A DNA stretch of 63,606 nt, the filler included, from Octopus bimaculoides (lineage: Eukaryota), in the NCBI RefSeq assembly GCF_001194135.2. It is 7 parts of 6 records of this genome, joined end to end, with 100 filler letters (N's around TTAATTAATTAA, not from the genome) between each part and the next. Parts side by side here need not be neighbours in the genome. Positions count along the whole stretch, not along the records: positions 59,274 to 63,606 come from NW_026429887.1; 6 more parts are not named here. One strand, written 5' to 3'. The translations under genes were made by a program, and so were the position numbers. The notes under the pieces are model-generated. The model made no database searches, had not been told where the DNA came from, and saw only the letters and a program-made list of their open reading frames with translations. Shown here in pieces: positions 62,759 to 63,425 of the stretch. Numbering within the stretch: position 1 is the stretch's first letter; each line of letters opens with the position of its first letter.

Positions 62759-62837
62759 TTCTTGAAAAGAGCTGATTTATTGAGGAGACTTCAAATATTT
62801 CTTGAATCAAATGATGTTCCGATGTACTGGGATGTCG
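62759..62837 (+). CDS. Exon encoding the last helix of a death-fold domain plus linker (FLKRADLLRRLQIFLESNDVPMYWDV-G)
   Basis: Acceptor CCATTTGTGCAACACTTATCAG, donor G|GTAAAT, open 79-nt phase 0-1 exon, RxDL motif. Confidence 0.55.
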
Positions 62838-63353
62838 GTAAATAACATTCGACATTACGAACCGCAACCCCTAACAAGAAGATCAGGTATATTCTTATCC
62901 AATTTCAAGTTGCCTGTCATGTGTTTGTGACTTGCTCTTTGATGACCAACTTCATTGATATTGGAATTAAGCAGAAGACGAGAAAGTGTTGGTGTATGAC
63001 GTCTAGAAGTGAGAGAGCAATCATATGGCATTGATTTCGCACTGATGTAAGAAAAAAGATACAACAATGAGAAACGCAGTGTTGTCAAATGATAATTAAG
63101 TGAAATAGTTGTGACATTGTTAGATTATGTAGGANNNNNNNNNNNNNNNNNNNNNNNNNNNNNNNNNNNNNNNNNNNNNNNNNNNNNNNNNNNNNNNNNN
63201 NNNNNNNNNTATTACATGGGACAATTGCAGAAGATATAAATATAGTGATATCACGTTGATGATAACAATGTCTCACAATGATAAATTATCGATTAATTAT
63301 ATAAATACTGAAATTTTACTATAAATTATAAACCTTGGAAATATTTATTCCAG

Positions 63354-63425
63354 AGAGTCCAAAGCTGGGGGAAAAGGATCTTCTGACTGTGGCTCAGAAT
63401 TTAGGGAAAAATTGGTGGCAAGTTG
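63354..63425 (+). CDS. Exon encoding the first helices of a death domain (SPKLGEKDLLTVAQNLGKNWWQV-G)
   Basis: ATTTATTCCAG acceptor, G|GTGAGT donor, 72-nt phase 1-1; L...LL.VA..LG..W..V pattern as in PIDD/RAIDD-type death domains. Confidence 0.7.

What the first reader, a model, noticed from the sequence alone, without database searches (positions are those of the whole stretch)
62759..63425. Small-exon gene fragment encoding tandem death domains
Seen: two canonical GT-AG exons in compatible phase, reading FLKRADLLRRLQ...WDV-G then SPKLGEKDLLTVAQNLGKNWWQV-G, with a conserved acceptor between them leading into a gap. Established: RxDL/RxDI marks the last helix of death-fold domains, and LL.VA..LG..W..V matches helices 1-2 of PIDD/RAIDD-type death domains. 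Inference: the end of one death domain is followed by the start of another, so the protein carries death domains in tandem. It may be a lineage-specific apoptosis or immune adaptor. The ORF track misses it entirely.
Basis: partly seen in the sequence, partly recalled or inferred. Interest (0 to 1): 0.7.

Follow-up and report, generated by a model that had tools for sequence, protein, structure and literature searches.

The report
Possible FADD-like exon pair, unproven
Two tiny spliceable reading frames in a gappy animal scaffold resemble the junction between the death effector domain and the death domain of the apoptosis adaptor FADD, but fifty residues with no database homologue and no transcript evidence cannot prove a gene, and if real it would be an ordinary member of a known family.

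Summary
Exon A (62759-62837) and exon B (63354-63425) both have AG/GT borders and join in frame. The assembly gap lies inside the putative intron, so it does not affect the join.

The "tandem death domains" reading is not supported. Grafted as the last helix of a death domain, exon A adds nothing to the Pfam Death score. Grafted as helix 6 of a death effector domain (DED, RxDL motif), it adds about 9 bits. Exon B adds about 14 bits as death-domain helices 1-2. Together they align collinearly with FADD residues 70-114 (hhalign P 4e-4, probability 35%). A phase-1 intron sits in the linker, as in mouse FADD.

Evidence against a real gene:
- Pfam gives no direct hit, and PDB only non-significant SH3 matches for exon B.
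- Searches of 5.8 and 1.84 billion proteins find no real homologue.
- Exon B fits an SH3 graft about as well.
- A transposon-derived window mimics the death-domain start almost as well.
- The whole 0.9-kb unit is one arm of an old 2.8-kb tandem duplication in which the "exons" are no better conserved than the flanks.

I put a real FADD-like gene or pseudogene fragment at about 0.45 and chance at about 0.40. Interest is low.

The parts
62759..62837 (+). Candidate exon A (79 nt, phase 0->1). It encodes FLKRADLLRRLQIFLESNDVPMYWDV. The first 14 residues resemble DED helix 6 with the RxDL motif; the rest would be linker.
   Evidence: AG acceptor and GTAAAT donor are present. BLASTP to human FADD 70-82 gives 8/13 identities, pairwise E 0.005. 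The Pfam DED graft gains 9.4 bits. It is the top of 1456 windows in the DED slot of a FADD HMM.
62838..63353 (+). Putative phase-1 intron between exons A and B. It contains the assembly gap at 63135-63209.
   Evidence: Both flanks of the gap are collinear with the ungapped unit 1.
63120..63134 (+). Acceptor-like TTAGATTATGTAG|GA that runs into the gap. It has a weak A-rich tract and is probably not used.
   Evidence: It is identical to 60292-60306 in unit 1. A 15-nt identical run is expected in a duplicate that is about 75% identical (inference). In unit 1 the ORF behind it has only a weak, non-significant Pfam match (CowN, E 0.14, below cut-off).
63354..63425 (+). Candidate exon B (72 nt, phase 1->1). 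It encodes (E)SPKLGEKDLLTVAQNLGKNWWQV(G) and resembles death-domain helix 1 and the start of helix 2.
   Evidence: A good acceptor (tttattccag) and a consensus GTGAGT donor are present. The Pfam Death graft gains 13.6 bits, aligned from profile position 4. It is the top of 1456 windows in the DD slot, near-tied with a transposon-derived window. It also fits an SH3 graft.
62712..63606 (+). Unit 2 of a roughly 2.82-kb tandem duplication. It carries exons A and B and runs off the end of the piece.
   Evidence: Repeat families D1, D2, D3 and D6 have spacings of 2781-2828. The alignment with unit 1 shows 75% mean column identity.
59893..60810 (+). Unit 1, the decayed paralogous copy. Pseudo-exon A is 59939-60017 (SLKNAALLRRLQIFPESDNLLVNCDV), with TA instead of AG and GC instead of GT. 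Pseudo-exon B is 60538-60585 (EITKFVQEALKTSQQIG), which keeps AG and GTGAGT but has lost the W.
   Evidence: Pfam grafts gain 7.7 bits in the DED slot and 4.1 bits in the Death slot.
61374..62642 (+). Decayed non-LTR retrotransposon remnant (reverse transcriptase) with frameshifts and stops. It is cut off at its 3' side about 70 nt before unit 2 starts.
   Evidence: The stitched peptide hits P0001 (PF00078) with E 7e-22. tblastn with ORFs of contig L001 matches 61374-61577, 61722-62184 and 62238-62642, with E from 1e-20 to 5e-32.
60561..60668 (.). Assembly artefact: the same 49 nt appears on both sides of a 10-N gap, so the tail of unit 1 pseudo-exon B and its donor are printed twice.
   Evidence: Repeat family D2: 60561-60609 and 60620-60668 are 100% identical.

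Best explanation
The two mini-exons are a fragment of a FADD-like death-fold adaptor gene, or a recently decayed copy of one. Exon A would encode the last helix (alpha-6, with the RxDL motif) of a DED plus a short linker. After a phase-1 intron, exon B would encode helix 1 and the start of helix 2 of a death domain. In a complete protein the death domain would bind a death-domain receptor or adaptor, and the DED would recruit a DED caspase.

The locus later underwent a 2.8-kb tandem duplication that also copied part of an intronic LINE. The upstream copy has lost exon A's splice sites and the hallmark residues. Only the downstream copy, which is the finding, still looks usable.

Shown here: the sequence features, the collinear resemblance to FADD, and the duplication. 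Inferred: that the frames are spliced, translated and belong to a complete gene.
For: - The splice sites are canonical and the phases are compatible.
- Exon A matches human FADD 70-82 at 8/13 identities, pairwise E 0.005. The FADD sequence was verified against PDB 9n94_A.
- hhalign of the joined peptide against 18 FADDs gives one collinear alignment, 2-49 against 70-114, with 41% identity, P 3.9e-4 and probability 35%.
- Pfam grafts: the DED slot scores 75.0 against an X baseline of 65.6, and the Death slot 72.4 against 58.8. Both exceed all 8 shuffles.
- In a free search with a local FADD HMM over 218 stop-free fragments, the exon A ORF ranks 1, the exon B ORF ranks 3 and the unit 1 copy ranks 5. 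Each aligns at the expected model positions. The joined peptide has E 0.015.
- In graft scans, both exons are the maximum of 1456 windows in the piece. None of 106,959 Markov windows or 10,568 natural windows from unrelated eukaryotic DNA reaches either score.
- Mouse FADD has a phase-1 intron in the DED-DD linker, at codon 96. The intron here is phase 1 in the linker, 4-8 codons away.
- AlphaFold2 predicts helix 4-17, a loop, then helix 33-50.
- FADD with DED plus DD exists in molluscs, annelids and brachiopods (PMC11463336). RxDL is a DED hallmark (PMC4558505).
Against: - The direct Pfam scan of the peptides gives no Death, DED or CARD hit at E<=10.
- PDB phmmer of the joined peptide gives nothing at E<=10, although FADD is in the PDB.
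- The 5.8-billion-protein word search finds nothing. The exhaustive 1.84-billion-protein phmmer returns only repeat-protein artefacts. That collection does hold annotated eukaryotic proteomes, so no annotated protein contains these exons.
- The FADD model was chosen after the resemblance was noticed. In a family-agnostic search the similarity is not significant.
- A transposon-derived window (62107-62307, ENFTTDWYRLE) scores almost as high as exon B in the DD slot: 135.7 against 136.1 with the FADD HMM, and 69.0 against 72.4 with Pfam Death.
- Exon B also fits an SH3 graft.
- The two duplicate units show no exon-specific conservation.
- No exon for DED helices 1-5 or DD helices 2-6 is visible in the piece.
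- The AlphaFold2 pLDDT is only 64.8.
Confidence: 0.45

Rival explanations
1. This is a chance look-alike. The two open frames are ordinary short ORFs in non-coding (intronic or intergenic) AT-rich DNA that was tandemly duplicated. They happen to carry AG/GT borders and helix-like peptides. The reader, and then I, matched them after the fact to death-fold motifs.
For: - There is no significant hit in any unbiased search.
- ORFs of this length are common here: 56 of 25 aa or more in 4.3 kb.
- The exons are no better conserved than the flanks between the two units. dN and dS look alike, with 3 synonymous and 11 non-synonymous codon changes.
- The unit 1 copy lacks exon A's splice sites and the W of exon B.
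- The same 25 residues can be fitted to two unrelated folds, Death and SH3.
- An unrelated LINE window nearly ties exon B in the DD slot.
- hhalign gives a homology probability of only 35%.
Against: - The best DED-slot window and the best DD-slot window of the whole piece lie next to each other, on the same strand, in the right order. They are spliceable in frame and collinear with one known architecture.
- Neither score is reached in about 117,000 null windows.
- The intron has the same phase and nearly the same place as in mouse FADD.
- The hallmark residues are all present: R-x-D-L, the G-K-x-W motif and the hydrophobic spacing.
Confidence: 0.4
2. Exon A is the last helix of one death domain and exon B is the start of the next, so the protein carries death domains in tandem and is a lineage-specific adaptor.
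For: R-x-D-L-like motifs also occur in the last helix of some death domains (my own knowledge, not tested here). Exon B fits death-domain helices 1-2.
Against: Grafted in register as the last helix of a death domain, exon A adds nothing to Pfam Death: 72.2 against 72.4 for the truncated domain, and 71.7-74.1 for shuffles. The alignment still stops at profile position 70 of 86. The same peptide adds 9.4 bits as DED helix 6. The direct Pfam scan gives no hit.
Confidence: 0.05
3. Exon B is part of an SH3 domain: the end of the RT loop, the n-Src loop and the WW strand. The gene would then be an unrelated SH3-containing signalling protein.
For: The best PDB matches of exon B are spectrin SH3 (GDILTLLNSTNKDWWKV), with E 0.55-1. 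Grafted into spectrin SH3, it scores 41.0 on SH3_1 against 17.1-28.9 for shuffles and 17.1 for an X baseline.
Against: - The E-values are not significant.
- When the tail of exon A replaces the ALYDY segment, the SH3_1 score falls to 17.7 and the alignment starts only at profile position 20.
- The Y-to-WW spacing is 3 residues shorter than in typical SH3 domains (my count).
- AlphaFold2 predicts a helix over residues 33-50, not strands.
- This reading leaves exon A's RxDL helix unexplained.
Confidence: 0.05

Closest known systems
FADD (FAS-associated death domain protein; Pfam DED PF01335 followed by Death PF00531)
   Same: The order of elements is the same: a DED alpha-6 with RxDL, a short linker, then death-domain alpha-1/2 with the G-K-x-W motif. 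The alignment to residues 70-114 is collinear, with 41% identity over 41 columns. A phase-1 intron sits in the linker, as in mouse FADD.
   Different: Only about 50 residues are visible. The domains are cut into mini-exons of 79 and 72 nt, whereas vertebrate FADD has two coding exons. The intron lies 4-8 codons further upstream. The linker differs. No homologue was found in any protein database. The locus is internally duplicated.
Death-domain N-terminus of RAIDD/PIDD-type proteins (Pfam Death)
   Same: Exon B carries the hydrophobic spacing and the LG..W motif of helices 1-2. The graft gains 13.6 bits from profile position 4.
   Different: There is no direct HMM hit. Exon A does not fit the death-domain C-terminus. 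No CARD or other RAIDD/PIDD element is present in the piece.
SH3 domain (Pfam SH3_1), for example alpha-spectrin SH3
   Same: D-L-L-T-V...K-N-W-W-Q-V resembles GDILTLL...KDWWKV. It is the best, though non-significant, PDB match.
   Different: There is no ALYDY-type N-terminal strand. The peptide is predicted helical. The E-value is about 0.5-1.

Membership tests
Death domain (Pfam PF00531) | A significant match of the peptide to the Death HMM | tested here: not met
   hmmscan of the joined peptide and of each exon peptide gives no family at E<=10. The test has low power for 25 residues.
Death domain (Pfam PF00531) | Helix 1-2 signature: the hydrophobic spacing and the conserved Trp | tested here: inconclusive
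   The graft onto FADD helices 2-6 scores 72.4 against an X baseline of 58.8, aligned from profile position 4. An unrelated LINE-derived window reaches 69.0.
Death domain (Pfam PF00531) | A complete six-helix bundle (helices 3-6) | not testable with these tools
   The piece ends 181 nt after exon B. No candidate exon was found in the equivalent part of unit 1.
Death effector domain (Pfam PF01335) | A significant match of the peptide to the DED HMM | tested here: not met
   No hit at E<=10.
Death effector domain (Pfam PF01335) | RxDL motif in helix 6 | tested here: met
   K-R-A-D-L-L-R-R-L is present. The graft extends the DED alignment to profile position 77 of 82 and gains 9.4 bits. It matches FADD 70-82 at 8/13 identities. 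The motif is defined in PMC4558505.
Death effector domain (Pfam PF01335) | Helices 1-5, with the hydrophobic patch and the acidic partner of the charged triad | tested here: not met
   No + strand fragment of the piece aligns to FADD HMM positions 1-66. They could lie beyond the piece or in the gaps.
FADD | DED directly followed by a death domain in one polypeptide | tested here: inconclusive
   hhalign gives a collinear alignment, 2-49 against 70-114, with P 3.9e-4 and probability 35%. The FADD HMM gives E 0.015 among 219 sequences.
FADD | A phase-1 intron in the DED-DD linker (vertebrate gene structure) | tested here: met
   Mouse FADD has a 286-nt first coding exon, with a phase-1 intron in codon D96. 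Here the intron is phase 1 in the codon for E, 4-8 codons upstream depending on the alignment. Matching phase alone has a 1 in 3 chance.
FADD | Recognisable orthologues or paralogues in protein databases | tested here: not met
   Searches find no real homologue.
FADD | Spliced, expressed transcript | not testable with these tools
   No RNA-seq data and no source genome are available. Window ORFs are not on record in the contig index.
   Pfam Death scores 72.2 with exon A against 72.4 without it, and 71.7-74.1 for shuffles.
SH3 domain (Pfam PF00018) | An ALYDY strand and RT loop upstream of the WW strand | tested here: not met
   The graft of the exon A tail plus exon B scores 17.7 on SH3_1, aligned only from profile position 20. 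The native domain scores 64.2.

The most novel reading that the evidence does not exclude
The 2.8-kb internal tandem duplication of the 'DED end / DD start' exon pair is functional. It would give either a protein with repeated death-fold modules (DED-DD-DED-DD) or alternative exon sets, and so a lineage-specific adaptor variant.
Probability: 0.04. Interest if true: 0.45.

Novelty: new member of a known kind. Interest (0 to 1): 0.2.

Why it matters
If real, this would be one more FADD-like (DED-DD) adaptor gene or pseudogene fragment in an invertebrate genome. Such adaptors are already known in molluscs, annelids and brachiopods (PMC11463336). It would be useful for annotating that genome but not surprising.

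The main value of the check is negative and methodological. The "tandem death domain" novelty claim is not supported. The case also shows that a 25-residue exon can be fitted about equally well to two unrelated folds, and can be mimicked by a transposon remnant.

Tried and rejected
1. A direct Pfam scan of all the exon peptides gave no death-fold hit; the stitched LINE peptide, scanned in the same call, gave no family either.
2. PDB phmmer of the joined peptide gave nothing. For exon B alone it gave only non-significant SH3 hits.
3. The 5.8-billion-protein word search and the exhaustive 1.84-billion-protein phmmer were run. The three 'hits' of the latter are repeat proteins that sum many weak stretches, so they are not homologues.
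4. The metagenome scan gave only a chance match on the antisense strand of a bacterial enolase gene.
5. I tried to recover the source contig by looking up four window ORFs. None is on record.
6. I considered that 61017-61139 (tcgcag|G LLRKCVPSVNTLSFSLLLNLSLHQLTRVVSHVEDV) is the next death-domain exon of unit 1. It has no Pfam hit when joined to exon B and scores -1.1 bits against the FADD HMM. Rejected.
7. I considered a middle exon behind the acceptor at 63134. In unit 1 the frame is open for 49 codons in the right phase, but the acceptor is weak and the peptide has only a non-significant Pfam match, CowN at E 0.14. In unit 2 it is hidden by the gap, so this stays undecidable.
8. I considered that the two units are LTRs flanking an internal region. 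The reverse transcriptase is of the non-LTR type and is truncated at its 3' side exactly where unit 2 begins. This fits a plain tandem duplication better.
9. An Rfam scan of the piece found nothing at E<=1.
10. The supplement of PMC11463336, which might have held mollusc FADD sequences, is not held as text.

Full report
**What is in the sequence.** The piece (59274-63606) is 35.6% GC. About 10% of it is N, in seven gaps.
- Exon A is 62759-62837, with borders ag|TTC...GTCG|gtaaat. It reads FLKRADLLRRLQIFLESNDVPMYWDV plus one base.
- Exon B is 63354-63425, with borders ccag|AGAGT...GTTG|gtgagt. It reads (E)SPKLGEKDLLTVAQNLGKNWWQV plus one base.
- The phases are 0->1 and 1->1, so the two exons join in frame.

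**The gap.** The gap at 63135-63209 lies inside the putative intron, so its length does not matter for the join. Its two flanks are collinear with an ungapped paralogous copy upstream. That copy has 64 nt where the gap is estimated at 75 N. The scaffold join is therefore credible. The acceptor-like site that runs into the gap cannot be evaluated in this copy.

**Context: an old tandem duplication.**
- The roughly 0.9 kb around the finding (unit 2, 62712-63606) is a direct repeat of 59893-60810 (unit 1). The spacing is about 2820 nt and mean column identity is 75%.
- Between the units lies a decayed non-LTR reverse-transcriptase remnant at 61374-62642 on the + strand (E 7e-22 to P0001, PF00078; tblastn).
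- The remnant is truncated at its 3' side just before unit 2 begins. This suggests a 2.8-kb tandem duplication that happened after the LINE inserted.
- The 'exons' are no better conserved than the flanks. Exon A differs at 19 of 79 nt: 3 synonymous and 11 non-synonymous codon changes.
- The unit 1 copy of exon A has TA in place of the AG acceptor and GC in place of the GT donor, and has lost the R and D of RxDL.
- The unit 1 copy of exon B keeps both splice sites but is 24 nt shorter and has lost the tryptophans.
- The segments 60561-60609 and 60620-60668 are identical on either side of a 10-N gap. This is an assembly artefact.

**Unbiased homology tests are all negative.**
- Pfam gives no family at E<=10 for any of the four exon peptides first scanned. 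In the second scan the only match was a non-significant CowN hit for the unit 1 middle ORF (E 0.14).
- PDB phmmer finds nothing for the joined peptide. For exon B alone it finds only spectrin SH3, at E 0.55-1.
- The 5.8-billion-protein word search finds no candidate. This collection does contain annotated eukaryotic proteomes, as the FADD search shows.
- The exhaustive phmmer against 1.84 billion representatives returns three repeat proteins whose scores sum many weak stretches.
- A metagenome scan gives one chance match, antisense to a bacterial enolase gene.
The power of that test is low for two half-helices, however.

**A more specific reading: the FADD junction.** Exon A's LKRADLLRRLQIF resembles human FADD 70-82, LRRHDLLRRVDDF. 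That segment is DED helix 6 with the RxDL motif. The match is 8/13 identities with pairwise E 0.005, and the FADD sequence was verified against PDB 9n94_A. RxDL is a DED hallmark (PMC4558505). Exon B's GEKDLL..VAQNLGKNWWQV resembles the start of the FADD death domain, GEEDLCAAFNVICDNVGKDWRRLA. hhalign of the joined peptide against 18 FADDs gives one collinear alignment, 2-49 against 70-114. It has 41% identity, P 3.9e-4 and probability 35%.

**Graft tests.** The peptides are too short to pass HMMER's filters. I therefore grafted them into human FADD and measured the change in Pfam scores.
- DED slot: exon A scores 75.0 against 65.6 with X in its place (+9.4). The alignment extends to profile position 77 of 82.
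- Death slot: exon B scores 72.4 against 58.8 (+13.6). The alignment starts at profile position 4.
- Both grafts exceed 8 composition shuffles.
- Exon A grafted in register as the last helix of a death domain adds nothing: 72.2 against 72.4, with shuffles at 71.7-74.1.
DED followed by DD, the FADD architecture, fits better.

**Ranking against other windows.** I built a local HMM from 112 mammalian FADDs.
- In a free search of all 218 stop-free fragments of the piece, the exon A ORF ranks first, the exon B ORF third and unit 1's exon A fifth. Each aligns at the expected model positions.
- In graft scans of all 1456 stop-free 26-residue windows, exon A and exon B are each the maximum for their slot.
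- Neither score is reached by 106,959 windows of Markov-simulated sequence, nor by 10,568 windows from unrelated eukaryotic DNA.

**Intron position and predicted structure.** Mouse FADD has a phase-1 intron in the linker, at codon D96. The intron here is also phase 1 in the linker, 4-8 codons upstream. AlphaFold2 on the single sequence predicts helix 4-17, a loop, then helix 33-50, with low confidence (pLDDT 64.8).

**Why this is still not proof.**
- The FADD model was chosen after I saw the resemblance. In family-agnostic searches the similarity is far from significant.
- A LINE-derived window (62107-62307, ENFTTDWYRLE) nearly ties exon B in the death-domain slot: 135.7 against 136.1 with the FADD HMM, and 69.0 against 72.4 with Pfam Death.
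- Exon B also fits an SH3 graft: 41.0 against 17.1-28.9. The SH3 reading does fail once exon A's tail has to supply the ALYDY strand (17.7).
- No exons for the rest of either domain are visible in the piece.
- The two duplicate units show no sign of purifying selection.

**Weighing.** I put a genuine FADD-like gene or pseudogene fragment at about 0.45. Chance look-alike ORFs in duplicated non-coding DNA get about 0.40.

**Comparison with what is known, and novelty.** FADD with DED plus DD is conserved in molluscs (including a cephalopod), annelids and brachiopods (PMC11463336). If real, this is a new member of a known kind, or a pseudogenised partial duplicate. It would not be a lineage-specific tandem-death-domain adaptor. 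Interest is low. The decisive data are spliced reads, the neighbouring exons to the left and right, the genome-wide copy number of the 0.9-kb unit, and an orthologous locus. None of these is reachable with the tools here.

Noticed in passing
window 60561-60668: The same 49 nt (GCCCTGAAAACATCACAGCAAATTGGTGAGTATAAACCAACAGTACCTT) stands on both sides of a 10-N gap. This is an unmerged overlap, so it is an assembly artefact. It prints the tail and donor of unit 1's pseudo-exon B twice.
   Followed up: yes
window 61374-62642 (+): A decayed non-LTR retrotransposon with reverse-transcriptase homology (49-62% to an ENA metagenome contig). It is truncated at its 3' side about 70 nt before unit 2 starts. 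This is unusual for a LINE and suggests that the 2.8-kb tandem duplication cut through it after it inserted.
   Followed up: partly
window 62107-62307 (+, frame of LLNNFKMQFTTENFTTDWYRLE): A conserved reverse-transcriptase segment mimics death-domain helices 1-2 almost as well as exon B. It gains 10.2 bits on Pfam Death and 15.5 bits on the FADD HMM. This is a caution for motif-based exon calls.
   Followed up: yes
window 59274-59386: This short stretch at the left edge looks far richer in G+C than the rest of the piece, which averages 36% (GC judged by eye, not computed). It is followed by a 253-N gap. The Rfam scan of the piece found nothing. It may be a different repeat or a mis-joined fragment.
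   Followed up: no
window 60305-60453 (+): In unit 1 the frame behind the acceptor-like TATGTAG|GA is open for 49 codons (GCLNRERGLREDSLCLVVLNIELLHDILENVDRMHSGHQLTIDEKNILQ), in the phase that exon A's donor would need. It has only a non-significant Pfam match (CowN, E 0.14). The equivalent part of unit 2 is hidden by the gap.
   Followed up: partly
L001 (ENA ERZ26222911 contig, 10.6 kb): A contig from a metagenome assembly is evidently eukaryotic. It carries the closest relative of the LINE, with several ORFs, and a THAP9_C-domain ORF.
   Followed up: no
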